This document shows positions 3,308 to 47,141 of a DNA stretch of 57,880 nucleotides, piece after piece. Position numbers and translations under genes: made by a program. Each line of letters begins with the position of its first letter. Within the stretch, counting starts at the first letter, position 1. The notes under the pieces are model-generated. The model ran no database searches. It saw only the letters and a list, made by a program, of their open reading frames with translations, and was not told the DNA's origin. The DNA is from Octopus bimaculoides (taxonomy: Eukaryota), in NCBI RefSeq assembly GCF_001194135.2, contig NC_068996.1:6230347-6288226 (forward strand). Reading direction: 5' to 3'.

Positions 3308-4149
3308 TCATCATTTAAAATCCATGTTCCATGTTAGTATGGGCTTAATGGTTTGACAGGATCTGATGAGTCCAAGGACTACATTGTGTTCTATTGTCTG
3401 CATTGGCTTGGTTCCTACAGCTGGATGTCCTTCCTAATGCGAACCACTTTACAGTGTCCAGGGTGCTTTTTTCATGCCCTCATCTCTGGTGAGGTCACTG
3501 TGCAGCTTGCAAGATTATTGATCCCAAATGGGAGTGGTGCCAACATTATTCTGAGAGAGGAGGAATAAAGAAGGGTACAGTGTGAGAGAGAGAAGGGCTG
3601 AAACAGAACAGGTTTCTTGTAGAGGAACTACATGGCTACTCGCATATTGGAAGAGAGGCCGGGAGTGATCAGGTTGAGCTGGAAAGCAATACAAATAATG
3701 GTGATGAGATGTCACAAGACCTTCAAGATACGAAATGGATCAGAATGAATAGGACAAAGGGACCAGGAGTGAGCAGGAGGAGTAGATGTTTGATTGTGCA
3801 GTGCAGCAGAATTATAATGATAATGCAGTAGACAGGAGAACAACAAAAGAGAGGTGACATACTGTTGGGTTGGTTGCAAGGGTGGATGGGGAAGGGAGAG
3901 GAGGCATAATTAGTGTATGCGGGGATGAGGAGATAATTCAGTGGCTCAGTGGGGGTGGGTGATCAGTGAAAGTGTGGGTGTGGAGAACAGTAAGGATGAA
4001 GAGTGGATAACAAGTGAAATGGTTCTGGGTAGTAAGAAAAGTGGTATCGTGGAAGAACTACACTTAGGGGAGATGATGGTGGAGGAGGGAGGAAATTGGG
4101 TGAAGGTTCCACTAATTTATACACACACCCACACAGCCTTTACCAGAAC

Positions 4150-7027: not shown

Positions 7028-7089
7028 GTACCGTGTGACCAATAACATCAAGATGACAGATTCAAAATATTTTACCACCACTAAAAAAG
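7028..7089 (+). CDS. AP1B1/AP2B1: beta-adaptin first coding exon (5'UTR 7028..7052, ATG at 7053; [13 protein letters not shown])
   Basis: Acceptor ttgcag at 7027 and donor G|gtacag at 7090; the peptide is the conserved beta-adaptin N-terminus. Confidence 0.95.
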
Positions 7090-23815: not shown

Positions 23816-23852
<37 letters not shown>

Positions 23853-24298
23853 GAGACAAAATCCAAAATTACAGGTAAAAAACTCAATTAAAATCAATTT
23901 ATAAAAATTAAAATTAAATTGAGCCTTATAGATAAAGTATATATATATTATATTATATTATATTTATCTTATGATATTTACTTTACTTTATATTATACTC
24001 ATTTATTGTGCTTTTAATTATTAATTTTTCTATATGTGATAGTGGATTTTCATNNNNNNNNNNNNNATATATATACCTTTTACTGAAGTACATTATTAGT
24101 TACAGATTCTGTGAATGTGATGTTTGTGTGTGTGTGTGTATAAGCATGGCTGTGTGGTAAGAAGTTTGTTTCCCAGCCACATAATTCCAGGTTCAATGCT
24201 ATTATGTGATACCTTGGGCAAGTGTCTTCTACTATCACCATGGACCAAATAAAGTGTTGTGGGTGAATTTGGTCAACAGAAACTGAAAAAAAAGTATG

Positions 24299-24350
<52 letters not shown>

Positions 24351-30300: not shown

Positions 30301-33300
30301 TTCATGTTTTTTTTTTATTGATTGTATGTCTGTTGTGAGGAAGGGTGTGATGTTAAGCATGTTATGTTCTGTGGGTTGCCTTTTCTTTCTTTTAAAAAAA
30401 CTTTTATCTGTCCCCTAATTTTATATTACTTGTTTAACTCTTGTTTTCAAACTCTTTTGGTTTAAAGCTTTGGTCTGCAGCCAGCACAATCTCTACAATT
30501 ACAAGGTCCCCTGAACCCTAACCAAACAGCATTCACATCTCTACCACTTAATACTGTTGGACCAGTTTTGAAAATGGATCCTCTAACTAATTTACAGGTA
30601 CTTGCTTTTTTTTTAAATAGATTTTTAGTGTTTTATATGTCTTTATTAGGGGGTCACTTTCAATGCTCTCAGTGCCACAGGATCTGCCTATCTGGTATTG
30701 GTCTTATCAGCCATGTCTGCTCCTATAAGAAACAATGTGCTAGAGGTGGAGGGGGATGAATGTCTTGTACCTGGGCTGTCATAAGCAAGCTAAGCAAAAG
30801 TTGGGGAAGAAAGAGTCAGCTGCCATGAATCTTTTTCAGGGTTTCTATGATGGAAAGGAAGAGGTTATCTTTGGACTGGAGACGTAACATGTATGAAAGG
30901 GTGCTGAGAAGTTGCTGGCTTTTTAGGGTATTGTGAAAGGCCTGGTTGGAAACCCAACCTTTCGAGTTCTTTTCCAGGGCTTAGAAAAACTGAAGGACTG
31001 CTGCAATAAGCGTATGAATCTGAGAGGAGAATATGTTGAATAAAATCATAATTAACTGATCCTCCTATATTCTCTTTTACCTAATGCCAGGAATGTTTCA
31101 GCACCCCTTCATCATCATCATCGTTTAACGTCCACTTTTCCATGCTAGCATGGGTTGGACGATTTGACTGAGGACTGGTGAAACCGGATGGCTACACCTG
31201 GCTCCAATCTGATTTGGCAGTTTCTACAGCTGGATGCCCTTCCTAATGCCAACCACTCCGAGAGTGTAACTGTTAAAAGTACTCAAGGACCAGGTGTTGA
31301 GGTTAAACTTGGTGATGGATTCAGTATATCTCTCAAGAACAAGAACAGCCTCCCTGATGTATTTATACCCATTTTATATTCATCAAATTTTACAAGGATT
31401 TAGTTAACCTCAAGCTACAATAGAATTCAATTTGTTACATTTGAATACTAAATTTTAACGACTGAACAATATAACCTTTTCGATACCAACCTGTCTATAA
31501 CGAGCCCTAATTCTGATATAAACCCATCTGGTTTGAAGTGTTCACATTTAAATTTCAACCTTCCTTGATATATTATGTAATTTTTATGTATAATTTCATA
31601 ATTTATGTAAGAACTGTTTTGTTAAACTATGTTCCAAACGTTAATAATAATGGGAAAATTATTTTCGTTAAATTCATTGAAATTTTTGATGTATTTTAAT
31701 CACTTTTTAAAATAATGGACAATGAATTTCTATAGAAATATGTTCCCCTCTCCTCAAACCAAGAAGGTTGAATAATAAATTGTTTGAAATGATTCAAGAA
31801 TTGTATATTATATATTAGTGTTCCCTGTTCTGTTGTAGTTCAGTATACAATTGCATTTGAAACATCCAATGCAAAAGTTCCAAACAACCACAGTGATGAA
31901 ATATATAAGAGAACGTATGAATTAAACTTGTGTTTATCATAACTAGTAATGATGATGGATTCTTTCATCAAAAATGATGTATGAGCATCTGCTTTTGTTA
32001 AACGACCAGCACAAATGATTTGTGTTTGTAATGATCAAATGTTTGTGCTGTTCATTGGCTCTCTCCCTTCACCGAATCCACATTGCCTGAACGGGAGCAC
32101 GGTGTACAACGCATTAGGTGTCAGAGTGATTGCAGAGCAATGCAAGACGAAGCGTTTTGCACCATTTGGTCTAAGAATTGAAACCATGATCTCACAATCA
32201 TGATTGCAACACCCTAACCACTAGGCCATGTCTCTTCACATAACTCGTAATACTAAGTATAATAGTAACCAAATCACTGAACTGGCAGCAGATTGGATGA
32301 GGATAATTTACATGGAGCTCTAAACTCAACATTAACAGGTGTAAATCTATTTGTATACACAAGGTATACTATATTTAAACGATATATTGTTTTTTAATTA
32401 TTCTCAGCATGCTAAAAAATAATTTTTCTTGTTCTTTTCTTTTTTTCAGGTTGCCATTAAAAATAACATTGATGTGTTTTACTTCAGTTGCGTAGTTCCA
32501 ATGCATATCTACTTTGTTGAAGACGGTGAAATGGACAAAAGAGTATTCTTAGCCACATGGAAAGACATTCCAGCTCAAAATGAAGTGCAGCATACCATAA
32601 ATGATGTACAACTCAATGCTGGTAAGTGCCATCAGTATCCATGGTATTACTGAATATCACCATGTAGGTGCAGGCATAGCTGTGTGGTTAAGAAGCTTGC
32701 TTTGCAACCATATGGTTTCAGGTTCAGTCCCACTGCACAGCACCTTGGGCAAGTTATCTTCTATTATTGCTTCAGGCCAATCAATGATTTATGAGTGAAT
32801 TTGGTAGGTGAAAACTTTTTGGAAGCCAGTCATGTGTTTGTATTTGTTCCCCCACCCCATCATCAACCATTCCTTAACATTTGGTTCAGTTTGTTTATAC
32901 CCCTGTATCTAGCAGTTCAGAAAATGAGATTGATAGAATAAGTACCATAATCATCATTATTTAATGTCCACCTTCCATGCTGGCATGGGCTGGACGGTTT
33001 GATAGGAACCAGGCAGGAGCCTGCACCAGACTTCTGTGTCTGTTTTGGCATAGTTTTTATGGTTGGATGCCCTTCCTAACACCAACCACCCAGCAAAATG
33101 GACTGAGTGGTTTTTCCAAACACCAACCACTTTACAGCGTGGACTGGATGCTTTTTAAGTGGCACCTGCACTGACAGGGTCACCAAGTAACTTGCAAGAC
33201 AAAGATCATTTGAGAGGGGGAAGGGACATTGAAAGAGGTGATCTTGTGTCGGATGATAAAAGGTTATGGTAAGACAGAGAGACAGAAACAGGTGTCTTGC

Positions 33301-36300
33301 TGCAAAGGAGATACATGGTTACCCAGCCTGAGGGAAAAACAGGAGGAGAGAGAGTGGGAGACAGCTAGAGTATGAGAGAGAGCAAGAGAGAGTTGGTTGT
33401 GAAGTGCTGGACATACTCACAAGTGACAGGGGATCAGAATATAATGGGATGGTCGAGTAAAAGGAGAGAGAGATAGATGGTGGCCAGACATTAAAAAAGA
33501 AAATGTACTGCGTTGGATTTGTTTGACTAAACCCTTCAAGGCAGATTCTCAGCATAACCACAGTCTTATGATCAAAACAAGTAAAAGATGAAAGCCACCA
33601 CATTAGCTCTCTCAACACCAAACTGCCTGCATGTCTCTTTTATAAAGCATTCATGTTTAGTTAATTCATTCTTGGATTAGATTGCTTATGTTTGGTCCAC
33701 CGTGGGATGAAGGCTTCAGCATGTTCTCTCCACCAAGAGGTCACACTGGTTTGATGAGCTTACTCTGCTACACTGGCTAAACACGGCTTGGCATAGGAAT
33801 GCAGTTTTTGTACTCAAGAGTAGTTAAGTCAATTACTGTCTTATTATAATCTCACCCATATTTCAGGCCTCATGCCTAAATTATGAAAATAATTACGGTC
33901 CGAATGATATTGTAAGTTATATATATAATATGTATATATGCTAGAGTGTTACCCAATCTATGACGGGTAACTTTCAAAGTATACTTTTGCCTCCATGGAA
34001 ATATGGCATACATACAATAATTATGATTTAATTTTTCTCAAGTTTTTTCATGGTTATACAAAATGATGAAATGAATTCTAATTTTCAAAAGAAAAATATT
34101 TATTACCTTAACTTGGTAGCATTTAAATTGGCCAATGTGAATAAATAAACATTGCATTTGACAAAGAAACCTGAATGCGAAAGGGCTAAAATATGATTTA
34201 GTAGCACACCTCATGCTTTTACTTAAAGTGCTTAGGTAGCCACAGCCATTCATAGATACCTTCCTGGCCCTTCTGATCCTCACAAAGTGAAACATCCAGG
34301 ATTTGACAGCTAGAGGGAGAGATATCTGCACAAGCACTAGGCTGGTGTTCATTTTCAGCTGAGTAGGCAGGAGCAATGTGAAATGAAGTACCTTGCTCAA
34401 GGACACAATGAACTTCCTGTTTCAGGAATCAAACCCATGACATTATGATCATAAGTTCAACACCTTGAGTCACTTACAAAAGAGTTAATGTTGTAGATGC
34501 TGCCAGTTATTTTCTTCTGTATTAATTCATAATGTATTTTAACGATTTACAACTAATTGCTATTTTGTAGATATGGTTTCCCAAAAACTTAGAAACAACA
34601 ATATTTTCACTATTGCCAAGAGGAATGTCGAAGGACAAGATATGTTGTATCAATCACTCAAACTGACCAATGGCATCTGGGTATTGGCAGAGCTTAAAAT
34701 ACAGCCTGGAAATCCTAGTTTCACTGTGAGTAAATGCAAAAGTTATTGGCTATTACAACTACGCCTGGTTTTTCTTTTTTAACTTTGATGTTCTTTTTCT
34801 TTGCTTTCTAAACAAATACTTTAAAAATTGTATGGTATGGTGTTTTTTCCTTCTTCTTCCTCTCAAATTAATCTCAGCTAAAACTTAATTTTATCAATAT
34901 CTATTTCTATATTGGTATTGCCAAACACTACTAGGTTATTCCTTACAATTTTAAATTAAAAAAAAAAGAAAACTATTTAAAAACGTTATCACTTTTCTGT
35001 TCATTTATAGCATGAGCACTAACTAATCTTTTAACATTATTAAATATGCAAGTTAAATCCTAACTGGTCTTTCACTTAACTTTATTTTTCTCCTAATATT
35101 TAATTAACTTGAATATTTCCCTAATACTCTAATACTTCAATTTTCATATATTTTTTTTTTGTTTTTGATAGAACTACAAATTTCTAAAACTGTGATGGTT
35201 TTCAAAATATATTTATTTATTTATTAAGCATCTATTTTCAGTTACTTCAAATTATTCAAAAGCGTTTTATAATGAAATCTTTTACTCCAAACCAGAAAAA
35301 AACCTTCAAAAAAAAAAAAAAAAAAAAAGAAAAGCATAAAGCTATTTTAATCTTTGTCTAAGTAAATTTACAAATTTTGTTTCATTATCAAAGTAAACTT
35401 ACAAATTTTGTTTCATTATCAAAGTAAACTTACAAATTTTGTTTCATTATCAAGGGGTAAATATTGCTCTAATATAGTGGTTTTCCTTCAGGGTGTCATG
35501 TTACCCTAGGGAAACATGACAATAATTAGAATTATTTTGGAGCTTATGCTTTCTTTTATGGTGCAAAAATAGTCACATATTTTAAGCATCTGAAGATAGA
35601 ATCAATGATTTCAGAGAAATGAGGGAAACCACTGTGTTAATAATGTCTGCCACACCAGTTTCTACTTATAACTTGTTTCTTTTTATAATGTCTGCCACAC
35701 CAGTTTCTTTTTATAACTTGTTCTTTGTTGCATTTTATATTCATCTACTACTATGTTAATTTTGTTTAATAAATAGGCACAGGCATGACTGTGTTTCAGG
35801 TTTAGTCTTACTGTGCTGCACCATGGGCAAATGTCTTCTACTATATCGCCAGGCTGATCATTGCCTTGTGAAGGAATTTGGTTGACAGAAATCATGTAGA
35901 AGCCCATTGAAAGAGCGAGCGAGTGAGAATGAGTGAGTGAGTGAGCGAACGAGCGACTGGCTTAGCAGTTTGGCAAAAGAGACTGAGACAATGAGCATCA
36001 GACTTTAAGTAAAAACAAAAGTTAATACTGGGGTCAGTTTGTTCAACTAAAGCCCTCCAAAGGAAGTACCCCTGCATTGTTGCAGTTCAATGACTGAATC
36101 AATTAAAAGATAAAAGAAAAATGTAATCTGTGACAGAAAAGCTGTATCTGTCAGTGATTTCTAATTTTGTGGCTATCATAGAGTTCATAGAGTTATTTAT
36201 TGTGTTGCACTTAAATTATAATAATATTGTTACTAAATTTTCTCTTGTTTGCTTGCTTTCATTACTCTGTTGTTCAAAAAATTTTGCCTGTAAACCTGAA

Positions 36301-39300
36301 ACATTTATTTCATGGAAAAATTATAAAGTTCTTGCTTTCACTGAACAATAATAGCAATATTAAAAAAAAAAAAGGGAGTGGTTGGTTGGTGTTGGGAAGG
36401 GCATCTAGCTATAAAAACCCTGCTAAAACAGACAGTGAAGCCTGGTGCAGACTTCTGGCTTGCAAGTCCTTGTCAAACCATCCAGCCGATGCCAACATGG
36501 AAAATGGATGTTTAATGATGATAGCCATGTATTCACCTTCAGCAAGACACATGCTCCTGTCCCTTTGTCTTGGTTTCTTATCCCTCAATACTATACCCAA
36601 CTCTGATGAGGGGTCTTATCTTGCAGGTACTTGGTGACATCAACAGTACTGGTACCATGTAAAAAGCACCCAATACACTCTGTAAAGTAGTTGGTGTTAG
36701 GAAGGGCATCCAGCTGTAGAAATCAGGCCAAAACAGATGTGATGTACCTGGCAGGGCCCTCTGGTTTACCTGTTCTTGTCAGCATAGAAAAGGGGACATT
36801 AAATGATTATTATGATTAAGGTAAATAAGACAAGAGCACAGAATTGAAGGATTGAATATTGGGATAAAGTTCTGTAAACTAAACTTGGGTAAAATAGTTT
36901 TGTAAAAAAAAGAATTGTTGAAATGAAAAAAATAAAATTAATTCAATTTGCATATCTAATGAAAAAAACTCTATCTTGACATCAAAGGCACTGTAAATCT
37001 TCATAGACCAAAAGTGTTTTCATTTTTTAATTAATGTAGCTGAGTCTTTACATAGCTTAGTGGTTGTGGTGTTAGTCTTATGATCATAAACTTGTAGGTT
37101 CAATTCCTGGACTGGGCAATATGTTGTATCCTTTATGTAATAAATACTAAGTGCTCAATGCTCTAAAGTAGAGCTAAAATAGTGAAATACATAAAATACA
37201 CAAGTATGTGTGCTTGTCAGCTAAAGAGTCAATATTTTAAATCAAGACATCAGTAGTCCTTTGAAAATACATTCTGGAATGTCACCCACAAGGGCTTCCT
37301 CAATAACCTGTTATTTTTGTTATTGGCATCAGTGAAAATATAATTAAAATGCCAAGTAAGGAATTTTAACCATCCTCCTTTTCTTCCAGCTGGAGTACCA
37401 TATATCTCCCTTAGAGCAAGACACCTTTTCCTGTTCCCCTATCATGTTTTAACCCCTTTGTTACGATATTTCTGTTGAAATACATTGCCTTTGTTTCAAT
37501 TATGGCTGAAAGTAATGAAGAATTTAGTAAAATAATTTAGTCATTATTAAGCTGGTAACTGGAACATAAATTAACACTGAATTTTGATGGAAAGTTTTAA
37601 CTGAAATCACTTCAAAGCATGAAGTCTATATCATAAAACCAAGGGCGGTCTCAGGTGGGTTAGTATCAAAACGGTTGATGTTTTACCTGGCATAAAGCCA
37701 CCTTTCTCAGTACTTCTCCCCTTGATTCAATTGAGAGGTGTTACCTTGCAAGTTACTTGGCAACCACAGTAATGCTGGTGCCATGTATGAAAAAATTGCC
37801 CCCCACACACACACTACAGTGTACACTGTAAAGTGGTTGGCATTAGGAAGGGCATCCAGCTGTGGAAACCATGCCAAATCAGACTGGAGCATGGTGCAGT
37901 CCTCTAGCTCATCAACCCCTATTGAACTACCTAAAACAAGTTAAGTGATGATGATGGGAGATGGGTGGCGGGTGTTGGAACAATCCAGAGAAATTAAATT
38001 TCTTCATAATAATCTTTTTCCTGATTTAAACATAAAGCAAAGAATATAATTAATGGCAGAAAAGAAGTGTCTTCTAAAACTTTAACTGTATTCTATTTTG
38101 TTCTCCCCTTCCTCCTCCTTCTCTTCTTCTTCCTCCCCTCTTCTTCCTCCCCTCTTCTTCCTCCCCTCGTCTTCCTCCCCTCTTCTTCCTCCCCTCTTCT
38201 TCCTCCCCTCTTCTTCCTCCCCTCTTCTTCTTCCCCTCTTCTTCCTCCCCTCTTCTTCTTCCCTCTTCTTCCTCCCCTCTTCTTNNNNNNNNNNNNNNNN
38301 NNNNNNNNNNNNNNNNNNNNNNNNNNNNNNNNNNNNNNNNNNNNNNNNNNNNNNNNNNNNNNNNNNNNNNNNNNNNNNNNNNNNNNNNNNNNNNNNNNNN
38401 NNNNNNNNNNNNNNNNNNNNNNNNNNNNNNNNNNNNNNNNNNNNNNNNNNNNNNNNNNNNNNNNNNNNNNNNNNNNNNNNNNNNNNNNNNNNNNNNNNNN
38501 NNNNNNNNNNNNNNNNNNNNNNNNNNNNNNNNNNNNNNNNNNNNNNNNNNNNNNNNNNNNNNNNNNNNNNNNNNNNNNNNNNNNNNNNNNNNNNNNNNNN
38601 NNNNNNNNNNNNNNNNNNNNNNNNNNNNNNNNNNNNNNNNNNNNNNNNNNNNNNNNNNNNNNNNNNNNNNNNNNNNNNNNNNNNNTCTTCTTCCCCTCTT
38701 CTTCTTCCCCTCTTCTTCTTCCCCTCTTCTTCTTCCCCTCTTCTTCCTCCCCTCTTCTTCCCCCCTCTTCTTCCTCCTTTTCTTTCTCCTTTTTTTTTTT
38801 GTTTTCCTTCATGTAAATCATGTTCATCAAAAAATTAATAGCAAAGCATCTTGATCTGTTCTGGCATATATTGACTGCAAAGTCAATATACTTATGTTTT
38901 ATGTTGAACAATTTAAATCAATGTTCTCATTTTGTTATATTCTCACACCAGAGCATGTACTACAATTTTTTTTCCTCCAGTATTTGTTTTCAAAATTTAT
39001 TTTACATTTTCATTTCTAAGTATTTTCCTCTCTTAGAAAATAGAGACTGGTTGTGTGTGTGTATGTATATATATATATAGTTTAATTATTCTATAATTAT
39101 GAGGATATGTGGTTCTGGATGCACTGTGTGGTGAAAAGATGGATGGTCACTGCTGGGATACCTTTTTGATTGTAGATGTGTTTTCTGGGCAATCTAATGT
39201 ATAAAAACAGATGAAGCAGTGTAACATATTCAAACAATCTTATTACAGTCTATGTGATTTCATCACAGTATGCTGTTTGACCTTCAGTAAGGCAGAGACA

Positions 39301-42300
39301 TAACTGAAGCTACAGATCTGTTCAACCAACTACCTGTGTGCCATATGTCTGCTTGATCAATTCACTTCAGGCTACAAAACAACAGTAACCCTAAAGCTTC
39401 ATCTTGTCTTTTTTTTCGACCTTAGACACTCTTAAGAGTATAAGCTTATTAATTTGCTTCAGTAGCTGCAATAAAAACAAAACAAAAAAAGAAACTAATT
39501 AGATAGGTGCAGATGTGCTGTTTGGTTGAGAAGCTTACTTCCCAACTACGTGATCTTGGTTTCAGTCCCATTGTGTGGCACCTTAAACTCTTGTCTTGTA
39601 CTGTAGCCCCCAGGCTGACCAAAGCCTTGTGAGTAGATTTGGTCGACAGAAACTGAAGAGGCCTGTTATTCTTTTCCCTTGAGTACCAGTGATTTCTGCT
39701 AAAAAGTTTTACGATTTTGGTGCTTTTGTCTTCATGTTTCTTTTTTTTAAATGCGTTCTCCCCACCAACTAATTGATAAAAAATATCAGCTTAAAAAGCA
39801 GTCAAATTGTATTCACATATATTGGTGTCCAGTTATCAAAACACGAGAAAAAAGTTTAAAATTCCAAACTGAAATTAGGTTAATATTTTATTATATTTAT
39901 TTGTCTTTGTATGACCCTTTGTAAGTTAAGTTTAGTTTTGTGAAGATATATCATCTGTGTGTATATGTATGTGTGTTTCTGTGTACCCTGTCTAGGTGTC
40001 GTGTGATTGAAAATGAGCATCACCATCATACTAGTGACGTTCATTTTCATTCTTCCATGAAAAGCATGTTTAGCTATGGGGTAATATTAGCTTGCTTGGA
40101 AACAGATGAGGGTTGGCAACAGGAATGGTGCCTGCTCATAGAAAACCTGCTTTGACAAATTCCACCTGGCCCATTCATGGAAAAGTGGACATCAAACAAC
40201 AACAATGATGAGAGAGACATAATGTGTGCCATATAGAATATCTTACTGTATATAGTTACACTTATGTATAGCTAGAAGTGTTGAGTATACCCAAGTTCTG
40301 TTTAACATTTGGTCTTACTGGCAGTGAAAACTACATCTAAGTATATAGTCAGAGGAGTGACAGTTAGTAATTATTCTGAAATATTCTATAATGGAACTTT
40401 GGGCTGTGTAGACTGAAAAAGAAGTAGACAGAATTGCCATGTTTGATAAAATTAAAATAGTTTTTTTTTAACTTTTAAAATTTGTCTGACAGCATGGCAA
40501 ATAAAGATTAATTATAGGGATGTAAACTCTTGTTTTATCTTCTTATTAATGAAGATGATGTGGGGTTGAGGAAAAAATTTTACTCTTTCTTTTGCAAATT
40601 GCTGCTCTTTTTTTATTCTGATTGTTACCTTTTTTTTATATATATATAATTTTATCTATTATTGCTACTCATTTAAGAAATTAACTAATGCTTGTGGTGT
40701 TAGTGGTGATGGTGGTTATATATCTATTTTCATTGGTCTTTTCCTTCTTTTTTTGTTTGTAGTATTATAATAAAGTGTAATTAGTCTATTTTTAAATGTA
40801 CTTTCAAAATTTTATCTTAATCATTTCATTACCATATTTTTGATAAAATACAGTAACTTTATCATAGTCAATTTTGAAAATAACAAAGAATTTAGTAAAA
40901 TAAGTTTGTCATTATTAATCTGGTGTTAAAAACTTAAATCAACATGAAATTTTGATGAAAAGTTTTAATTTAGATAATTTTTGAACAGGAAGTATGTATT
41001 GTAGAACGAGAGACTATTTTAGATGAGTTGCTATCAAAAGGATTAAACACTATAATTCATTATTTAATGAAAAAGAAAAGAAAAGAAAAATGAAATCTAT
41101 TATTAAAATGCTGTTTAAGTTATCAAATGTCAACATAGAGCATCGGCTTCCTTGGTGCCATTAAATATAACTTGTTTGTAACAATAGTTGGGAACTGCTC
41201 TGCTGTGTCTTCTTGAAATGTCACAGTTACATCAAGGGTGACGACACACGATTCGTCTTGAGACAACTTTGTATACTTACCAAATGTTTCTATCCTCCTT
41301 CCCATCTCTTCCTTCCTTTCTCTTAATCTGACCAAAATTCTTTCCCTTCCCTCACCTCCTCCCTGCCTGCTACTTTATTTACCTTTCTGTACTCTTCACA
41401 ATTGTCATCGGCTTTCTTCTTGTCTTCAGACTACTTCTCCGCCAATACAAAATACATGTCAAGTGCAGGTAAGTTTTGTAGTCGAGATTATTGCATACTA
41501 GTAAATTGTTATATACTAGTCTCAGTACTGGATGTTTGTTGTTGTTGTTATTTCATGTATTTTTTTTTTTCATTTGTTTTAATTTTTTAATTTTCTTTCC
41601 TTTTTTATTTGCATTTCAAATGAGTTCAATGTGCACAATGAAGATGGGAGAGAAAAAGTAACGGGTGTGGGTGGGGGGTCTGATTGCAAGAACGGTTGAA
41701 ATTTCATTTTATTTATTGATTCATAAGATGTCAAAAGTTTGTATAAACCTGGATTAGCCTCTACATAGTCATTAAATTTGCTAGAAATAACAACAAAAAA
41801 ACACTCATATTTTTGTGAAGAAACCTATATGTGGTCGCTAAATATATTGCAAAAATGGTGTTGGAAGTTTCTTAAATATTTTCAGTTACACCCCCCACCA
41901 TCTCACTTAAACATTTATTCCTGTTTCCCGAAATTACTTACAAAGATAAAGGTGTAAGCATTTAGTTTAGTCTTTGCTAAAAAGAATTATAATTATTTTC
42001 TTTTAGACTCTTTAGTAGCCATTATTTAAACAACTTTGGTGCTAAAAACACTTTTTTAATGAACTACAGAATCTAAATGTTTCAATTTATTTAATGTATT
42101 CATGAAATAAAGGAATTTAATTAAAATTAATCATTGCTTGAATGTTTGGAATATAATTTGACAAAAGATTCTATCATAATGGAAAGAAGTAATTTGGATA
42201 TAAATATTTTAAAATGGACAAATTTTGTATGGCAGAGTAAAGAGGCAATCTTAGATGGGTTAGTTTTAAATACTCCTTTACTAAAAGATTTTAATATTCT

Positions 42301-45300
42301 TATGAATTTATATCTCACCCCCAAAATCTTTTTCCTTGCATTTGTCGAGATTCAAAATTATCCTAAATTTTTATTATGAAAGATCCACCAAACTTGCCCC
42401 TATGCCTCTCAAAGAAGCTGCTTTCCTGATACTACCCCCACCCCACACAGAGCAAAGTATGCTTTCCTTTTAGATCTTATCAGAAGGATTGCTGTATCGT
42501 TTCAACGTGATTTAAAGAGATTTATAACTATAGCTTCCAGCAAAGTATCAAAATGTATAATCTCTCCTTCATATACTGGTCTGATAAATATTTGACTTCA
42601 GTATTCTGGTTGGAGCTGAATTCTAAGGTGAAACATCTCACATAATCTTTGAATGTAGAATTGGTAAGTGTAGAAATGAGTATGTAATGATTGGAAAGTT
42701 AAAGAAGGAATTCAGTATTATGTATAATTCCAGATACCAGTTGCTGATATGAAACAAATCAGTTGCTTTTGATATATAAGTTACTGGATGTTTTCCAAAT
42801 AAAATCAGTTAATAAACTCCATGGCAAATTTTTATAAAATAATTATCTGAAATATTGACTCATCATAACATGATTTTTTTTTTTGTTTTTAAATTTCAAT
42901 TAATCCTTATTTTATTACCATTTCACCAAAACATGGATTACCATTTGCATTTTCATAAAATTTTCCTTTTTTTTATGGAAAAAAAATATTGTTAGTTGAT
43001 ATTTATTGTGTACATCATATTTGAGGAAACAGTTAATATTTTAAATATATAATATATATATTTTAAAGTAAATTAATGAGTTACTAACATTTTTTTTTTC
43101 TTTGAATAACCATTTCACTGCACATTCCACTCCAAGATTCCGACTGATTCACACCTCAGAGCTTGCTCCCCAATCACTTAATCTAATTGCATGGACATCA
43201 ATGTTGGCATGTCATTTTTACCTTTACTATTGCATGGATTAATTGTTTAAATAATATTGAGAAACATTAATTAACACTTGTGATGCTCTAAGTTTCAAAC
43301 TATTGCACTTAGTTTTCAGATACTTGTAATATGATCATTGTAATTTTTACAAACTTTTAACCTCATCTTTGGTAGAGTTGTTAAAGCATCAGACTGAATG
43401 CCTCGTAATATATGTTCCAACTCCTGTACTCTGAGTTCAAATCTTGCTGAGGTCAACTTTTCCTTTCATCATTCAGGATAGAGATTTAAGATACCAATCT
43501 AGTATGGTAAATTGATAAGATTGTTAGAGAGTTGGATGAGATGTCTTGTGGTAACTATTTTAGTTCAGAAAATAAAGAATAATTATGCAGAAAGTTTTAA
43601 AAATAGCTTTATATTTCAGGTGCAAAGACCTCTCTTCAGAAGAATGCCATCAAAGAAATGTGTGTTTGCATAGATTTTACCATTTTGGATAGACCAGTGC
43701 TTGTGCTGGCACAAGAAGATAGCTTGTGGCAAGCTGGTAGAAATGTTAACGTGCCGGGCAAAATGCTTAGTGGTATTTTGTTCCTCTTTTCGTTCTGAGT
43801 TCAAATTCTGCCGAGGTCGACTTTGACTTTCATCCTTTTGGGGACAATAAATTAAGTACTAGTTGCGTACTGAGGTCGATCTAATCAACTGGCCCCCTCC
43901 CTCCAAAATTTTGTGCCTTGTGCCTAGAGTAGAAAAGAAGATAACTTGCTGGCACAAGCACTGGACTATCCAAAATGGCAGGATTTGTGTAAATACACAT
44001 TTCTTTGACTGTATTCTTCTGAAGATAGGAGTTTGCACCTGAAATATAAACTCTCTGCATCGTTAGAAACCTTCATTCATTGTTCAGCTTCTGTACTACA
44101 ATGCTTCAAGCAAACTGCAACACTCTAGTATTGTGTACTTGTTTCTTTTTGTATCTGATATTTGTTATGGATCTTCTATAAGAATAAAGCTGTATCCCTT
44201 AAATTGCCATTTCTATATACGAAGACCAAGAAGAAATCTTGCGAAAGTTGAGTTATTTTGTTGAGATATTTCTTGAAATCACCTGAGAAGATACATCTAC
44301 ACCAATGGATACACCTAAACCAGATGTTCAGTATCCTATCCGCAAGGGATTGATGCTAGCTGGGTCAAAACAGTTGTAGTGATCAACAAAGATTCTCGTA
44401 TCTTCTCTCTTCTGTCTCTCTCCATTAATCATATACATACATGCATACATACATACATACATATATATATGTATAAGATTGAGATGAATTATAGTAGTAC
44501 TGAGCAGTCATAAACAACTCTTCTTTGCACATTCAGCTTTGCACATTCAGTATTTAGCAGATTTCAATGTTATAACAGTTGTAGTGATGAATATGACTAG
44601 CGCTGCAGTTTTAACACAATTTCATACATATCTAATGACTTGTTTTGTTTGGCATTAATCAGTCTTGTTTAGTTCTCACAGAATATTAGTTGCATTGCTT
44701 TATCTTCATTTCAAATATAATTTCTAACAAATTTCTAATGAAGAGGTACAAGATTTTTTTTCTTTTTCAAAAGTAATTACACAGGCATAGCTGACTGATT
44801 AAAGAAATGTTTGTTTGCTGTCTACATGATTTTGGGTTTAATCCCACTGCATGGCACCTTGGGCAAGTGTCTTCTACTATAGCTCTTGATCAACAAAGGC
44901 TCAGTGAATGGATTAGTTTGATGGAAACTAAAAGAAGCCTGTTGTGTGTATCTGAGAGAGTGAGTTTATTTTCTACTTCTTCACATGCTGGTTCCCTTGC
45001 TGGTTGAAAGCAGTAGCTTCACTGATGGGGCTGTAACTTGAAATTGACGGTATTGACCAGATTGTTGCTGGTCACAAGGAGTTTCTTTGCATTGTTGTAG
45101 CTTTCGAATGATGCCATCTCACTGGTTAGGCAAGCAGACCAACATTTCCCCTCAAAAGAACAGCAACAGTCTGTCACTGAGTTACTCATTTACAACTGAG
45201 GAGTGGACTGGAATAACATGAAATGTTTTGCTCCTCAAGTGCACAATGCAAATCCAATTTGGGAATCGAAACCACACTCTCATGATTGCGAGTGGAACAT

Positions 45301-45314
45301 CCTAGCCACTAGGC

Positions 45315-45357
<43 letters not shown>

Positions 45358-45449
45358 ATCTTAGTCAAAATTTCTAATCATGAGTTTTCAGCTGTCAGTC
45401 AAATGAACCTCTGTATTCATTGAATTAACTTATAAATGATTGGGTATTA

Positions 45450-45490
<41 letters not shown>

Positions 45491-46377
45491 TCTTAATATA
45501 ATTTTCAGACAGAAAATCAGCATGACACTGAAATTCAGGAACAGCCAAGCCAAGGAGCTTCCACACAGTTTCCATTTACCCAATTTCATTCATATGATAT
45601 GAGATAATCTGACATTACACAAAATGGCAATTGCCCAGATGCCAATATTTCTGTGGTGTAATAGGATACATACACAAGAAAACTCAAACACATTGTCCCC
45701 TTTGGCCTAACCCAGGTCCTCATGATTGCAAAGCAAACCCTTTAACCATCTGGCTATCCTGCACACACACACACACACCTCTTTCCATTTACCAATAGAA
45801 TATCCTATCTCATGCGGATAATTTCTGTAAAGCTTTTCTAAAGCAGCAAAATTTTTTTCTATCATATAAAAGACGTTTGCAACAGTTACAGAATTGAACA
45901 CTTTTTTTTTTGTCATGCATAGTTTTGTCACTTGACATTCTCATAGAATGAACCTGTAATTATTTCTATCTTTGGTTTCATTATTATTTACACAAACCTT
46001 CCTTTATGAATCACAGCCTAATCTCAACTCTCAAAATCTTTGAAAAGGCAAGTTGAGTCATCCCAAATTTGATTTGTTATAATCTATGGCTACTGCATTG
46101 AGTGACACCCAATATTAGGTTTATTGAAAAAGCAGAAATAATAATTAACTGTCAGATTTTGCAATTCCTAACACACACACACACACACACANNNNNNNNN
46201 NNNNNNNNNNNNNNNNNNNNNNNNNNNNNNNNNNNNNNNNNNNNNNNNNNNNNNNNNNNNNNNNNNNNNNNNNNNNNNNNNNNNNNNNNNNNNNNNNNNN
46301 NNNNNNNNNNNNNNNNNNNNNNNNNNNNNNNNNNNNNNNNNNNNNNNNNNNNNNNNNNNNNNNNNNNNNNNNNNNNN

Positions 46378-46422
<45 letters not shown>

Positions 46423-47141
46423 CTTTCTCTCTCTCCCTGGAGTCCTTAGATTACTTTTTAAAGCTTTGTATGTTAAGGCTTAAAAAATTGCCTTATTCTT
46501 TACATATTGCTTAACAGAAAATAAACGTCAATTTTACTGAATCAGTTATCAATCATTAATTGGTAATTATGCCAGTTTTTTATTTTATTTTTATTTCTTA
46601 AATCTTAGAAAACAAGTTTAAAACCATGCCTCAGATATTTTTAGTGCCCCGGGCCAAATACTCTTTTAATTCCTCTCAGTTAATTTGTTACCTGCTTCTG
46701 GATTGTCTATAAAATATGTTGATATATTGCCTGCATATATGTGATGGTAGTGCTATTGTTTAAATTGAATGTTTATTTACTTTATAACTATCTTTGTGGT
46801 ATTATTTAATGTTACACAGCACACATATCCCCCCTCTCTCTCCCTCTCTCTTTTGCATATTTTCACTCATACATATACATTCTCTTTCACTTATAGCCTC
46901 TTGCCCTCTCTCTCTCACACACAATATACATACACACACTCTCTGTCTGTCTATGATACTCTCTCAAACTCATTCATATATAGGCAATAACAAAAAAGAA
47001 AAAAATCTCTTGATACTGTGAAAAATTTGTTTCAATATCATCAAATGTTAATGTTGCTTGTTTCAGCTGTCTCTGAAAGCACGTGCGATGGAGGTTTACC
47101 AAGGAATGCAACTTGCATATGAAACTATTTTGCACAATTGA
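7053..47141 (+). CDS. AP1B1/AP2B1: AP-1/AP-2 complex subunit beta (beta-adaptin), spliced CDS of 21 exons, 931 aa
   Basis: Manual splicing gives an open frame from [22 protein letters not shown] to [24 protein letters not shown]. Exon lengths sum to 2796 nt and all 20 introns are GT-AG with compatible phases. The protein shows the adaptin N-terminal trunk, hinge and appendage sequence typical of beta1/beta2-adaptin. Invertebrates generally have one gene orthologous to both AP1B1 and AP2B1. Confidence 0.97.
7655..7760 (+). CDS. AP1B1/AP2B1: beta-adaptin coding exon 2 ([36 protein letters not shown])
   Basis: ttag| and |gttagt boundaries, 106 nt, frame continuous. Confidence 0.96.
8159..8294 (+). 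CDS. AP1B1/AP2B1: beta-adaptin coding exon 3 ([45 protein letters not shown])
   Basis: ctag| and |gtaagc, 136 nt; overlaps ORF 8187..8513. Confidence 0.97.
10427..11408. mobile_element. three copies of an approximately 220-bp TTAA-type (piggyBac-like) MITE in +,-,+ orientation
   Basis: Copies 10427..10645, 10934..11152 (reverse) and 11186..11408 have TTAACC(C)TT-like ends and share the core gaatttagtaaaataa...ggtgtttggaaca. Related copies lie at 37449..37680 and about 40800..41046. Confidence 0.7.
11856..12101 (+). CDS. AP1B1/AP2B1: beta-adaptin coding exon 4 ([24 protein letters not shown]...SDSNPM)
   Basis: ctag| and |gtaagt, 246 nt; overlaps ORF 11877..12122. Confidence 0.97.
13345..13469 (+). 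CDS. AP1B1/AP2B1: beta-adaptin coding exon 5 ([12 protein letters not shown]...[13 protein letters not shown])
   Basis: caag| and |gtaagt, 125 nt. Confidence 0.96.
14655..14723 (+). CDS. AP1B1/AP2B1: beta-adaptin coding exon 6 ([23 protein letters not shown])
   Basis: acag| and |gtaaat, 69 nt. Confidence 0.96.
15748..15814 (+). CDS. AP1B1/AP2B1: beta-adaptin coding exon 7 ([22 protein letters not shown])
   Basis: ttcag| and |gtaagt, 67 nt. Confidence 0.96.
17180..17505 (+). mobile_element. tRNA-derived SINE (family C variant)
   Basis: ggcgtggtttagtggttaagg head, gtgtccttgagtaagacacttt core, same tail as 20181..20567. Confidence 0.8.
17933..18087 (+). CDS. AP1B1/AP2B1: beta-adaptin coding exon 8 (VIMKFMEM...[32 protein letters not shown])
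   Basis: ttag| and |gtaaga, 155 nt. Confidence 0.96.
18208..18348 (+). CDS. AP1B1/AP2B1: beta-adaptin coding exon 9 ([32 protein letters not shown]...VLSELKE)
   Basis: ttcag| and |gtgagt, 141 nt. Confidence 0.96.
18700..19220 (+). mobile_element. degenerate RTE LINE 3' ORF fragment
   Basis: Encodes [35 protein letters not shown], homologous to 50130..50290; boundaries approximate. Confidence 0.8.
19501..19666 (+). CDS. AP1B1/AP2B1: beta-adaptin coding exon 10 ([25 protein letters not shown]...[10 protein letters not shown])
   Basis: atag| and |gtataa, 166 nt; overlaps ORF 19397..19672. Confidence 0.97.
19939..20027 (+). CDS. AP1B1/AP2B1: beta-adaptin coding exon 11 ([30 protein letters not shown])
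   Basis: taag| and |gtaagc, 89 nt. Confidence 0.96.
20181..20567 (+). mobile_element. tRNA-derived SINE (family C)
   Basis: Head GGTGCAATGGCCCAGTGGTTAGGGCAGCGGACTC with B-box GGTTTCGATTCC. The tail gtgtctgtggagtgctcagccacttgca is shared with 17180..17505 and 55835..56110. Confidence 0.85.
21443..21545 (+). CDS. AP1B1/AP2B1: beta-adaptin coding exon 12 ([34 protein letters not shown])
   Basis: gtag| and |gtatga, 103 nt. Confidence 0.96.
22079..22246 (-). mobile_element. RTE-3'UTR-derived short element
   Basis: (CAT)n-cgtttaacgtccgctttccatgctagcatggg...; further copies at about 9700..9920 (+), 12255..12450 (+), 16463..16615 (-), 31110..31268 (-), 32950..33200 (-), 36380..36515 (+), 37780..37955 (+) and 54105..54350 (-). 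Confidence 0.85.
22580..22678 (+). CDS. AP1B1/AP2B1: beta-adaptin coding exon 13 ([33 protein letters not shown])
   Basis: gcag| and |gtaaaa, 99 nt. Confidence 0.96.
24145..24565 (+). mobile_element. older family A SINE copy with internal (TG)n(AG)n
   Basis: gcatggctgtgtggtaagaag head and gcttcagcacag..gttaatggctgaaacc tail. Confidence 0.8.
24721..24977 (+). CDS. AP1B1/AP2B1: beta-adaptin coding exon 14 ([22 protein letters not shown]...ALPPRSTS), end of trunk
   Basis: aaag| and |gtaagt, 257 nt; overlaps ORF 24544..24981. Confidence 0.96.
25670..25882 (+). mobile_element. family A SINE 3' half
   Basis: Matches 52970..53150. Confidence 0.85.
25988..26216 (+). CDS. AP1B1/AP2B1: beta-adaptin coding exon 15, hinge with clathrin box LLDMD (26094..26108) and a poly-Q tract
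   Basis: ttag| and |gtgagt, 229 nt. GDLLDMDL matches the clathrin-box consensus (human beta2 LLNLD). Confidence 0.94.
27940..28032 (+). CDS. AP1B1/AP2B1: beta-adaptin coding exon 16, hinge ([31 protein letters not shown])
   Basis: Poly-pyrimidine acag| and |gtaatt, 93 nt, phase 0/0. Confidence 0.92.
28688..29037 (-). mobile_element. solo LTR (350 bp) with 4-bp target-site duplication AGTG
   Basis: Termini TGTAG...CTACA. AGTG lies at 28684..28687 and 29038..29041. The segment is CpG-rich relative to its flanks. Orientation is inferred from a minus-strand AATAAA about 100 nt from the end and is uncertain. Confidence 0.8.
29326..29471 (+). CDS. AP1B1/AP2B1: beta-adaptin coding exon 17, start of appendage ([17 protein letters not shown]...FAIQFNKNS)
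   Basis: ttag| and |gtatta, 146 nt. Confidence 0.95.
30468..30597 (+). CDS. AP1B1/AP2B1: beta-adaptin coding exon 18 ([15 protein letters not shown]...[11 protein letters not shown])
   Basis: aaag| and |gtactt, 130 nt. Confidence 0.95.
32450..32621 (+). CDS. AP1B1/AP2B1: beta-adaptin coding exon 19 ([12 protein letters not shown]...[16 protein letters not shown]...)
   Basis: tcag| and |gtaagt, 172 nt; overlaps ORF 32429..32653. Confidence 0.96.
34571..34725 (+). CDS. AP1B1/AP2B1: beta-adaptin coding exon 20 ([51 protein letters not shown])
   Basis: gtag| and |gtgagt, 155 nt, ends in phase 0. Confidence 0.96.
35362..35454. repeat. 3 x 31-bp tandem repeat GTAAACTTACAAATTTTGTTTCATTATCAAA
   Basis: Units start at 35362, 35393 and 35424 and are nearly identical. 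Confidence 0.95.
35641..35726. repeat. 45-bp tandem duplication (TAATGTCTGCCACACCAGTTTCT...)
   Basis: Units start at 35641 and 35686. Confidence 0.9.
38096..38790. repeat. pyrimidine-only (CTT/CCT) satellite, unit about CCCCTCTTCTTC(C/T)T, spanning a gap
   Basis: Seen directly; N-gap at 38285..38685. Confidence 0.95.
41430..41468 (+). CDS. AP1B1/AP2B1: candidate alternative cassette exon of beta-adaptin ([13 protein letters not shown], 39 nt, phase 0/0)
   Basis: Acceptor tttcttcttgtcttcag|, consensus donor CAG|gtaagt, length 3n with no stop in the required frame, and no AG between 41263 and 41427. No transcript evidence is available here. Confidence 0.6.
43733..43938 (+). mobile_element. 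SINE family D (ctgagttcaaattctgccgaggtcgactttgactttcatcctt core)
   Basis: The core recurs at about 9235..9400, 9400..9530 and 43430..43500. Confidence 0.7.
47067..47141 (+). CDS. AP1B1/AP2B1: beta-adaptin terminal coding exon ([24 protein letters not shown])
   Basis: tttcag| acceptor and TGA at 47139..47141; resembles the human beta1/beta2 C-terminus LSLKCRAPEVSQ...ILKN. Confidence 0.93.
   Translation: MSLKARAMEVYQGMQLAYETILHN

What the first reader, a model, noticed from the sequence alone, without database searches (positions are those of the whole stretch)
41263..41474. Hidden in-frame 39-nt cassette exon in the beta-adaptin appendage, with a 165-nt AG-free pyrimidine tract
Seen: within the 12.3-kb last intron, 41430..41468 is bounded by ttcttgtcttcag| and the consensus donor CAG|gtaagt. 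It is 39 nt long and reads [13 protein letters not shown] with no stop in phase 0, matching both neighbours (...QPGNPSFT | LSLK...). Upstream, 41263..41427 has no AG and is strongly C/T-rich, with branch-like TACTTAC (41274..41280) and CTGAC (41328..41332) and TGC motifs. Established: long AG-exclusion zones with distant branch points mark regulated exons, as in tropomyosin and alpha-actinin. As I recall, human AP1B1 has a 9-nt alternative microexon (DLE) at this junction (PGNPSCT-DLE-LSLKC); this should be verified. The platform subdomain of the beta2 appendage binds beta-arrestin, ARH and epsin, and the W, Y and E residues involved appear conserved here (LATWKD, DMLYQS, LAELK). Inference: a single invertebrate beta gene serving both AP-1 and AP-2 may make a tissue-specific, possibly neural, ear variant at an ancestrally alternative site.
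Basis: partly seen in the sequence, partly recalled or inferred. Interest (0 to 1): 0.75.

Follow-up and report, generated by a model that had tools for sequence, protein, structure and literature searches.

The report
Real, already annotated beta-adaptin cassette exon
The 39-base segment is a genuine, alternatively spliced exon of the octopus beta-adaptin gene that adds 13 amino acids to a loop of the protein's ear domain; it is conserved across octopuses and cuttlefish but is already present in public gene annotations, so it is a correct call rather than a discovery.

Summary
The bases 41430..41468 lie between ttcttgtcttcag| and CAG|gtaagt, read [13 protein letters not shown] in phase 0, and follow a 165-nt AG-free tract that is 78% pyrimidine.

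The cassette-exon interpretation is also correct, but the exon is not hidden. The 944-aa protein I assembled with this exon is identical to RefSeq XP_014773113.1 (Octopus bimaculoides AP-1 beta-1 isoform X3) and UniProt A0A0L8HE61. The skipping form is annotated too.

The same insert is annotated in O. sinensis, O. vulgaris and Argonauta hians. A 12-aa version (TTSPIQNSCQVQ) is in Sepia esculenta larval transcripts. Between Octopus and Argonauta, the exon plus about 57 nt upstream and 41 nt downstream is the only conserved island in the whole intron. Substitutions within the exon are mostly synonymous.

AlphaFold models place the insert in the hairpin after the strand that carries the E902 equivalent. 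The loop grows from 6 to 16 residues, and the insert's C-terminal end (V-Q, with C-Q extending the strand) takes the place of F-T.

Not shown: neural or tissue specificity, a distant branch point, and an ancestrally alternative site. Other phyla carry optional inserts at this junction with no evident sequence similarity. Novelty: already known.

The parts
7053..47141 (+). Coding region of the beta-adaptin (AP-1/AP-2 beta) gene: 21 constitutive coding exons plus the cassette
   Evidence: Spliced model. The 931-aa product equals the C-terminal 931 aa of XP_014773112.1. The 944-aa product equals XP_014773113.1 exactly. Pfam: Adaptin_N 14-534, Alpha_adaptinC2 705-811, B2-adapt-app_C 821-942.
34571..34725 (+). 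Penultimate constitutive coding exon, ending ...IQPGNPSFT, donor ACT|gtgagt, phase 0
41263..41427 (+). 165-nt AG-free, 78% pyrimidine tract upstream of the cassette acceptor
   Evidence: It is retained in O. sinensis (156 nt) and Argonauta (122 nt).
41328..41332 (+). CTGAC, the only CTRAY branch-point-like motif in the AG-free zone (-102)
   Evidence: O. sinensis has CTRAY at -93/-88 and Argonauta has TACTAAC at -107 (plus CTGAC at -25). Branch-point use was not tested.
41373..41429 (+). Upstream intronic block conserved between Octopus and Argonauta, including the polypyrimidine tract and acceptor ttcttgtcttcag
   Evidence: Alignment A1. With the exon and the downstream block, it forms the only significant match between the two last introns.
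41430..41468 (+). 39-nt cassette exon, phase 0, encoding [13 protein letters not shown]
   Evidence: Exact match of the inclusion protein to RefSeq and UniProt entries. Orthologous inserts in O. sinensis, O. vulgaris, Argonauta and Sepia.
41469..41509 (+). Donor GTAAGT plus a conserved downstream intronic block
47067..47141 (+). Last coding exon, [24 protein letters not shown] plus the stop codon

Best explanation
Window 41430..41468 is a bona fide, evolutionarily conserved, alternatively spliced 39-nt cassette exon. It lies in the last intron of the Octopus bimaculoides beta-adaptin gene.

Shown:
- mRNAs and proteins exist both with and without the exon.
- It is in frame and adds 13 residues (11-13 in other coleoids) inside the C-terminal platform subdomain of the appendage.
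- The peptide is under purifying selection.
- The exon with about 57 nt upstream and 41 nt downstream is the only conserved island of the intron.

Inferred from AlphaFold models:
- The appendage fold is unchanged.
- The beta-hairpin formed by WVLAELKIQ (which carries the E902 equivalent) and FTLSLKA keeps its strands.
- The insert's last residues take over the strand: V-Q replaces F-T and C-Q extends it.
- [16 protein letters not shown] is pushed out into a flexible 16-residue Ser/Thr/Pro-rich loop, in place of a 6-residue turn.

Inferred, not tested:
- The enlarged loop, which carries a conserved [ST]-P, lies next to the 'top' ligand site (W841, Y888, E849, E902) and modulates binding of helical DxxFxxFxxxR-type partners or clathrin.
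- Inclusion is regulated through the short exon length, the long pyrimidine tract (many UCUU/CUCU elements, possibly a distant branch point) and the conserved flanking intronic elements.
For: - Exact identity of my 944-aa inclusion model to XP_014773113.1 / A0A0L8HE61, and of the 931-aa skipping model to A0A0L8HDQ5.
- Inclusion and skipping pairs in O. sinensis (XP_036367565/XP_029648499 vs XP_036367566) and O. vulgaris (CAI9734700 vs CAI9734701). The O. vulgaris isoforms were added by PASA from Iso-Seq and RNA-seq. Argonauta hians carries [13 protein letters not shown].
- Independent transcript contigs from Sepia esculenta larvae encode TTSPIQNSCQVQ at the same junction (runs tied to papers).
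- An octopod transcript has the skipping junction (P0250, SRR3401912).
- Codon pattern: Argonauta shows 3 synonymous and 1 S->T change. Sepia shows 5 synonymous changes, 1 T->S and one codon deletion. This resembles the flanking exons (29 synonymous / 1 nonsynonymous, and 13/3).
- The only island conserved between the Octopus and Argonauta introns is 41373..41509.
- AF2 inclusion model: pLDDT 92.7, strand 222-230 = CQVQLSLKA, loop 206-221 with block pLDDT about 54. AF2 skipping model: pLDDT 95.0, strand 211-217 = FTLSLKA.
- The inclusion model matches 1E42 with TM 0.98 and rmsd 1.1 A.
- Ligand-site residues are invariant; their roles are from PMC1540706.
Against: - No junction-read counts or tissue data could be obtained, so regulation and tissue specificity are unproven.
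- In Sepia, every transcript in the cluster carries the exon, so it may be near-constitutive there.
- The insert loop has low model confidence, and no coordinates were available to measure its distance to the ligand groove.
- The AG-free zone is largely explained by base composition (P~0.2).
- Intronic conservation stops at -57, so a proximal branch point is at least as likely as one at -102.
- No Rbfox GCAUG motif is present within 200 nt in Octopus, and the TGC/YGCY motifs are not conserved in Argonauta.
- No significant RNA structure was found (z = -0.14 and -0.47).
Confidence: 0.9

Rival explanations
1. The exon is a neural-specific micro-exon of the SRRM4/eMIC-type programme. Under this reading it is included mainly in nervous tissue and gives a neuron-specific ear variant of the shared AP-1/AP-2 beta subunit.
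For: - The exon is short (39 nt) and frame-preserving, with a perfect donor and a long pyrimidine tract.
- The host is an endocytic gene.
- The flanking introns are conserved.
- Cuttlefish hatchlings, which have a large share of nervous tissue (my own knowledge), yield inclusion-only contigs.
Against: - At 39 nt it exceeds the strict 3-27 nt micro-exon definition.
- There is no UGC within 60 nt of the acceptor, and the TGC motifs at -66/-62 are absent in Argonauta.
- No tissue data were obtainable.
- Whole-larva libraries assembling only the inclusion form fit broad inclusion just as well.
Confidence: 0.2
2. The exon is effectively constitutive (or effectively always skipped) in Octopus. On this view the second isoform in the annotations is splicing noise or a pipeline artefact.
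For: All nine members of the Sepia cluster carry the insert. The only octopod Logan full-length contig lacks it (P0250). RefSeq 'X' isoforms are model predictions.
Against: Three independent annotation efforts report both forms: Gnomon for O. bimaculoides and O. sinensis, and PASA with Iso-Seq for O. vulgaris. Strong conservation of the exon and its peptide in octopods argues against 'always skipped'. A skipping transcript from an octopus library exists.
Confidence: 0.08
3. It is a chance pseudo-exon: a splice-site look-alike in a long, repeat-rich intron that is never spliced in.
For: By pattern alone, about 0.5 such candidates are expected per 12 kb, judging from the rest of the window (2 others in about 45 kb).
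Against: Refuted by the exact match to annotated inclusion isoforms, the orthologous insert in Sepia mRNAs, the island of conservation and the synonymous substitution pattern. The region is single-copy in the window.
Confidence: 0.01
4. The conserved island is something other than a coding exon, such as an intronic non-coding RNA or an element of an antisense gene.
For: The island is short (137 nt) and includes non-coding flanks.
Against: No Rfam match at E<=1. No stable structure. Substitutions follow the + strand codon frame. The sequence is present in mRNAs in frame.
Confidence: 0.01

Closest known systems
Annotated isoforms of the same gene: O. bimaculoides AP-1 complex subunit beta-1 X1/X3 (XP_014773111.1, XP_014773113.1; UniProt A0A0L8HE61) versus X2 (XP_014773112.1; A0A0L8HDQ5)
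   Same: Identical. The inclusion protein built from the window equals X3 residue for residue, and the skipping protein equals A0A0L8HDQ5.
   Different: Nothing at the sequence level. My literature searches found no paper that describes or tests this isoform.
Human/vertebrate AP1B1 isoforms with and without Asp-Leu-Glu (PGNPSCT-DLE-LSLKC)
   Same: An optional in-frame insertion at exactly the same phase-0 junction of the platform subdomain. Like V-Q in the octopus insert, the L-E end fits the hydrophobic-polar pattern of the strand residues it precedes.
   Different: It is 3 aa rather than 13, with no sequence similarity. The codons GAC TTA GAG end in AG, so it may arise from a tandem alternative acceptor rather than a separate exon. 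It occurs in a beta1-specific paralogue, whereas the octopus searches returned only one beta1/2 cluster.
Optional inserts at the same junction in other invertebrates: Littorina saxatilis X1 (12 aa, a 36-nt cassette), Mytilus spp. (6 aa, plus two alternative last exons), crayfish (21 aa)
   Same: The same intron and the same phase. In Littorina it is a separate small cassette exon in the intron (L017 28338-28373). Skipping isoforms are also annotated.
   Different: The insert sequences show no evident similarity. The Littorina exon has a 16-nt AG-free zone and unrelated flanks. The evidence fits recurrent origin or rapid turnover, not demonstrated common ancestry.
Regulated exons with long AG-exclusion zones and distant branch points, repressed through polypyrimidine-tract-binding protein (alpha-tropomyosin, alpha-actinin; established knowledge)
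   Same: A long pyrimidine tract without AG (165, 156 and 122 nt in three species), many UCUU/CUCU motifs, and a CTRAY or TACTAAC motif about 100 nt upstream.
   Different: No branch point has been mapped and no binding or tissue regulation is shown. Conservation is confined to the proximal 57 nt. The absence of AG is largely compositional.
AP-2 beta2-appendage structures (PDB 1E42, 2G30, 2IV8/2IV9)
   Same: The same fold (TM 0.98, rmsd 1.1 A, 62% identity). The ligand-site residues are all conserved.
   Different: The solved structures represent the form without an insert. The 16-residue loop has no structural precedent in the PDB hits.

Membership tests
AP-1/AP-2 beta-adaptin (beta1/beta2) | N-terminal adaptin trunk (Adaptin_N) | tested here: met
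   PF01602, residues 14-534, E = 3.7e-167
AP-1/AP-2 beta-adaptin (beta1/beta2) | Bipartite appendage: sandwich subdomain plus beta2-type platform subdomain | tested here: met
   PF02883 at 705-811 and PF09066 at 821-942. PDB hits AP1B1 and AP2B1, E~1e-99. The model matches 1E42 with TM 0.98.
AP-1/AP-2 beta-adaptin (beta1/beta2) | Conserved top-site and side-site ligand residues (W841, E849, Y888, E902, Y815) | tested here: met
   W140, E148, Y187, E201 and Y114 of the appendage query are invariant in 72 sequences. Numbering was checked. Roles are from PMC1540706.
Alternatively spliced cassette exon | Canonical AG/GT boundaries; length a multiple of 3; open in the frame set by both neighbours | tested here: met
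Alternatively spliced cassette exon | Both inclusion and skipping mRNAs exist | tested here: met
   Both forms are annotated in O. bimaculoides, O. sinensis and O. vulgaris. There are inclusion transcripts in Sepia and a skipping transcript in an octopus library. Direct junction counts in O. bimaculoides were not available.
Alternatively spliced cassette exon | Conservation of the exon and flanking intron in related species | tested here: met
   Alignment A1, island 41373-41509, codon pattern
Exons with a distant branch point / AG-exclusion zone, PTB-type regulation | AG-exclusion zone of about 100 nt or more upstream of the acceptor | tested here: met
   165, 156 and 122 nt in three species; the longest of 21 acceptors in the gene. 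Largely compositional.
Exons with a distant branch point / AG-exclusion zone, PTB-type regulation | Experimentally mapped distant branch point | not testable with these tools
   Only motif positions are available: CTGAC at -102, TACTAAC at -107 in Argonauta. Proximal candidates lie inside the conserved 57 nt.
Exons with a distant branch point / AG-exclusion zone, PTB-type regulation | Tissue-regulated inclusion dependent on a pyrimidine-tract binding repressor | not testable with these tools
   UCUU/CUCU motifs are frequent (11 in 200 nt), but there are no binding or expression data.
Neural micro-exons (SRRM4/eMIC-dependent) | Length 3-27 nt (strict) or <=51 nt (broad) | tested here: inconclusive
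   At 39 nt (36 and 33 nt in decapod transcripts) it fails the strict definition and meets the broad one.
Neural micro-exons (SRRM4/eMIC-dependent) | UGC-containing enhancer close to the 3' splice site | tested here: not met
   The nearest TGC is at -62/-66 in Octopus, and there is none within 200 nt upstream in Argonauta.
Neural micro-exons (SRRM4/eMIC-dependent) | Neural-enriched inclusion | not testable with these tools
   No tissue-resolved junction data were reachable. The supplements of the one relevant preprint are not held.

The most novel reading that the evidence does not exclude
The last, phase-0 intron of beta-adaptin may be a recurrent hot spot across Bilateria where lineages independently evolve optional mini-exons or alternative acceptors. 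Examples are cephalopods (11-13 aa), Littorina (12 aa), Mytilus (6 aa plus duplicated last exons), crayfish (21 aa) and vertebrate AP1B1 (DLE). Each would re-form the final beta-strand with its own C-terminal hydrophobic-polar pair and enlarge the hairpin loop beside E902. That would tune (or, through the conserved [ST]-P, phospho-regulate) top-site binding of arrestin/ARH/epsin-type helices or clathrin. In animals with one shared beta subunit, this would be a way to diversify AP-1/AP-2 function by tissue.
Probability: 0.2. Interest if true: 0.55.

Novelty: already known. Interest (0 to 1): 0.3.

Why it matters
As a sequence feature it adds nothing to public annotation. It does show that the first-stage reader can recover a real 39-nt alternative exon from raw sequence alone.

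The biological interest is modest. A peptide conserved since the split of octopuses and cuttlefish (roughly 270 million years by my own knowledge, not tested here) is inserted beside the ligand-binding site of the clathrin-adaptor ear. My searches found no paper describing it. The same junction carries optional inserts in several other phyla.

If the insert changes partner binding, it would be a simple way for animals with what appears to be a single beta1/2-adaptin to diversify AP-1/AP-2 function. That idea is testable with ordinary pull-downs and existing RNA-seq.

Tried and rejected
1. A short junction query (87 aa) returned only short genomic read-through fragments and no cephalopod hits. 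It was useful only for confirming vertebrate forms with and without DLE and the conserved intron position.
2. Exact look-ups of the 944-aa and 931-aa proteins, and of O. sinensis X2, in the contig index failed because only the longest product per gene is indexed. I then used the longest isoforms.
3. Tissue assignment through run accessions yielded only Sepia esculenta whole-larva libraries and an 'octopus' metatranscriptome. No tissue-resolved information came from this.
4. A preprint with O. bimaculoides tissue splicing data does not mention the gene, and its supplements are not held.
5. Literature searches for an AP1B1 micro-exon or a beta-adaptin appendage splice variant found nothing relevant.
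6. A conserved RNA hairpin pairing the 3' splice-site tract with the donor was suggested by RNAalifold on three sequences. I rejected it: the z-scores are -0.14 and -0.47 and there is only one compensatory pair.
7. The intronic ncRNA idea was rejected because there is no Rfam match.
8. The repeat or transposon origin of the exon was rejected because the region is single-copy in the window.
9. I looked for homology between the cephalopod and Littorina inserts by eye only and found no convincing alignment.
10. The third protein search (249-aa appendage) found one more Sepia fragment with the insert and no octopus fragments.
Full report
**1. Observation**

Every statement about the sequence holds.
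- Bases 41430..41468 read ACTACTTCTCCGCCAATACAAAATACATGTCAAGTGCAG, which translates to [13 protein letters not shown].
- The segment is preceded by ...ggctttcttcttgtcttcag and followed by gtaagt, so the donor is the full consensus CAG|GTAAGT.
- The previous AG is at 41261-41262, so 41263..41427 (165 nt) is AG-free. It is 78% pyrimidine.
- N gaps lie at 38285-38685 and 46192-46377.

**2. Gene context**

I used a human AP2B1 sequence written from memory only as a tblastn guide. Junctions were then chosen by GT/AG, frame and similarity.
- The result is a 21-exon coding model on the + strand, from ATG 7053 to the stop at 47141.
- The last intron is 34726..47066 (12,341 nt) and both of its junctions are phase 0.
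- The 931-aa product is identical to the C-terminal 931 residues of Octopus bimaculoides XP_014773112.1. The window is therefore this gene, or a sequence encoding an identical protein.
- Pfam places Adaptin_N at 14-534, the sandwich subdomain at 705-811 and the beta2-type platform subdomain at 821-942. The insert lies inside the platform subdomain.

**3. Is it more than chance?**

By pattern alone, only moderately.
- A scan for at least 10 of 12 pyrimidines + AG, an open frame of a multiple of three, and a GTRAGT donor finds one candidate in the last intron (this one). It finds three in the whole window.
- The tract's pyrimidine content is in the top 0.24% of 165-nt windows.
- Its AG-free length is the longest of the 21 acceptors in the gene; the others are 18-110 nt.
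- With the local base composition, however, the absence of AG has a probability of about 0.2. The 'AG-exclusion zone' is therefore mostly a restatement of the pyrimidine tract.
- The region is single-copy in the window.

**4. Decisive evidence**

*Annotation.* The 944-aa protein built by including the exon is, residue for residue, RefSeq XP_014773113.1 (AP-1 complex subunit beta-1 isoform X3, O. bimaculoides) and UniProt A0A0L8HE61.
- Isoform X1 (XP_014773111.1) also contains the exon.
- The 931-aa skipping form is UniProt A0A0L8HDQ5, and the same skipping junction is in RefSeq isoform X2, which carries the 76-aa N-terminal extension.
- The same 13 residues are in O. sinensis X1/X2 (X3 skips) and in O. 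vulgaris CAI9734700 (CAI9734701 skips).
- Argonauta hians carries [13 protein letters not shown].
- The O. vulgaris isoforms were added by PASA from Iso-Seq and RNA-seq evidence.

*Transcripts.*
- Contigs of about 3 kb from many sequencing runs encode TTSPIQNSCQVQ (12 aa) at the same junction.
- A related set encodes an 11-aa version, TSPIQNSCQVQ.
- Four of these runs are named in papers on whole larvae of the cuttlefish Sepia esculenta.
- A full-length octopod transcript from an 'octopus' metatranscriptome has the skipping junction.

**5. Conservation**

I fetched the O. sinensis (L004) and Argonauta hians (L005) loci.
- Neither has gaps in the last intron, and both carry the exon between the same two constitutive exons.
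- The O. bimaculoides contig between the gaps is collinear with the O. sinensis intron.
- Between Octopus and Argonauta, the only significant match in the entire intron is 41373..41509: 57 nt upstream, the exon, and 41 nt downstream.
- Within the exon, Argonauta differs at four positions: three synonymous and one S->T.
- Sepia differs by five synonymous changes, one T->S and one codon deletion.
- This pattern resembles the flanking constitutive exons, which show 29 synonymous to 1 nonsynonymous and 13 to 3. The peptide itself is therefore under constraint.
- The AG-free tract is kept in O. sinensis (156 nt) and Argonauta (122 nt).

**6. Splicing signals**

- The only CTRAY motif in the Octopus AG-free zone is CTGAC at -102.
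- O. sinensis has such motifs at -93 and -88. Argonauta has a perfect TACTAAC at -107 and also CTGAC at -25.
- UCUU/CUCU elements are frequent.
- No GCAUG motif is present within 200 nt in Octopus.
- The TGC/YGCY motifs at -66/-62 are missing in Argonauta.
- Conservation reaches only -57, and that block contains CAAT/TCAT candidates. A distant branch point is therefore plausible but not shown.
- A hairpin pairing the acceptor tract with the donor, proposed by RNAalifold, is not supported: z = -0.14 and -0.47.
- There is no Rfam match.

**7. Protein consequence**

The appendage matches AP1B1 and AP2B1 chains in the PDB at E~1e-99.

| Model | Mean pLDDT | First strand | Loop | Second strand |
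|---|---|---|---|---|
| Skipping | 95.0 | 197-204 | 6 residues, QPGNPS | 211-217, FTLSLKA |
| Inclusion | 92.7 | 197-205, WVLAELKIQ | 16 residues, 206-221 (residues 211-220 average pLDDT 54) | 222-230, CQVQLSLKA |

- The inclusion model superposes on 1E42 with TM 0.98 and rmsd 1.1 A.
- The insert's last residues therefore re-form the strand. V-Q replaces F-T, and [16 protein letters not shown] is expelled as a flexible Ser/Thr/Pro-rich loop.
- The first strand of this hairpin carries E201. By the numbering check, E201 is E902 of human beta2.
- E902 and E849 bind the arginine of the beta-arrestin DxxFxxFxxxR helix, and W841 and Y888 hold its phenylalanine (PMC1540706).
- All of these residues, and side-site Y815, are invariant in the 72-sequence alignment.
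- That the loop affects ligand binding, or that the conserved [ST]-P (TTSPP, TTTPP, TTSPI) is phosphorylated, is inference only. The tool gives no coordinates, so I could not measure distances.

**8. The wider claims**

*DLE.* Vertebrate AP1B1 exists with and without DLE at this junction, and the PDB AP1B1 chains carry it. The codons GAC TTA GAG end in AG, so a tandem alternative acceptor is as likely as a 9-nt micro-exon. I could not inspect the human genomic sequence.

*Other phyla.* Optional inserts at the same junction are annotated elsewhere.
- Littorina saxatilis: 12 aa, a separate 36-nt cassette at L017 28338-28373 with a 16-nt AG-free zone.
- Mytilus species: FVN[VL]LT, combined with two alternative last exons.
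- Crayfish: 21 aa.

The inserts have no evident similarity. The site looks like a recurrent hot spot, and common ancestry of the alternative event is not shown.

*Single beta gene.* This is consistent with the search, which returned one O. bimaculoides cluster. It was not tested exhaustively.

*Tissue or neural specificity.* This could not be tested. In Sepia whole-larva libraries, only the inclusion form is present among the cluster members.

**9. Verdict**

The exon is already annotated in RefSeq and UniProt, so it is not new.

The regulatory and functional readings remain hypotheses: distant branch point, neural variant, ancestral alternative site. The first is plausible. The second is untested. 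The third is weakened by the unrelated insert sequences.

Noticed in passing
window 7026-7053: RefSeq isoforms X1/X2 carry a 76-aa N-terminal extension (MCYHTG...TNNIK). It comes from an upstream 5' exon spliced to an acceptor at 7026|7027 and reads into the conserved start ATG at 7053. Other species' proteins start at MTDSKYF, so the extension looks like an upstream-ATG annotation artefact.
   Followed up: partly
window 25982-25996: The hinge exon has two acceptors 6 nt apart (tatttag|CGGCAG|CTT). The annotated proteins use 25988, which adds Gly-Ser. Position 25994 would be an in-frame tandem alternative.
   Followed up: partly
L017 28338-28373 (Littorina saxatilis); proteins P0156, P0260-P0272 (Mytilus); P0236, P0276-P0281 (crayfish): The same phase-0 junction carries optional inserts with no evident similarity in a gastropod (12 aa), mussels (6 aa) and crayfish (21 aa). 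Mussels also have two alternative last exons (LSLKAR... or VSLRSGTPDIF...), used in all combinations with the 6-aa insert.
   Followed up: partly
L018 252-296 (vertebrate AP1B1 transcript contig): The optional DLE is encoded by GAC TTA GAG directly before CTG TCC. It therefore ends in AG and could be produced by a tandem alternative acceptor rather than by a separate 9-nt exon.
   Followed up: partly
window about 3338-3565, 22159-22299, 26492-26731, 32965-33171, 54151-54315 (+ strand frames), with related copies on the - strand: A dispersed repeat family recurs through the introns and flanks. It is recognisable by ORF fragments such as ...[13 protein letters not shown]... and ...[17 protein letters not shown].... 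It is probably a SINE or other transposon family.
   Followed up: no
window 42809-42993: A second long AG-free stretch (185 nt) lies in the same intron, 1.3 kb downstream of the cassette. The pseudo-exon scan found no exon-like candidate next to it.
   Followed up: no
window 48577-48882: An open frame downstream of the gene (…NYRGIKLLDQVMKVTERV…) looks like a fragment of a retroelement reverse transcriptase, but it gave no Pfam match at E<=0.01.
   Followed up: partly
window 41501-41506: A second donor-like GTAAAT lies 32 nt downstream of the cassette donor, inside the conserved downstream block. It is conserved in Argonauta. Using it would shift the frame and meet a TAG, so it is more likely a regulatory element than an alternative donor.
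   Followed up: no
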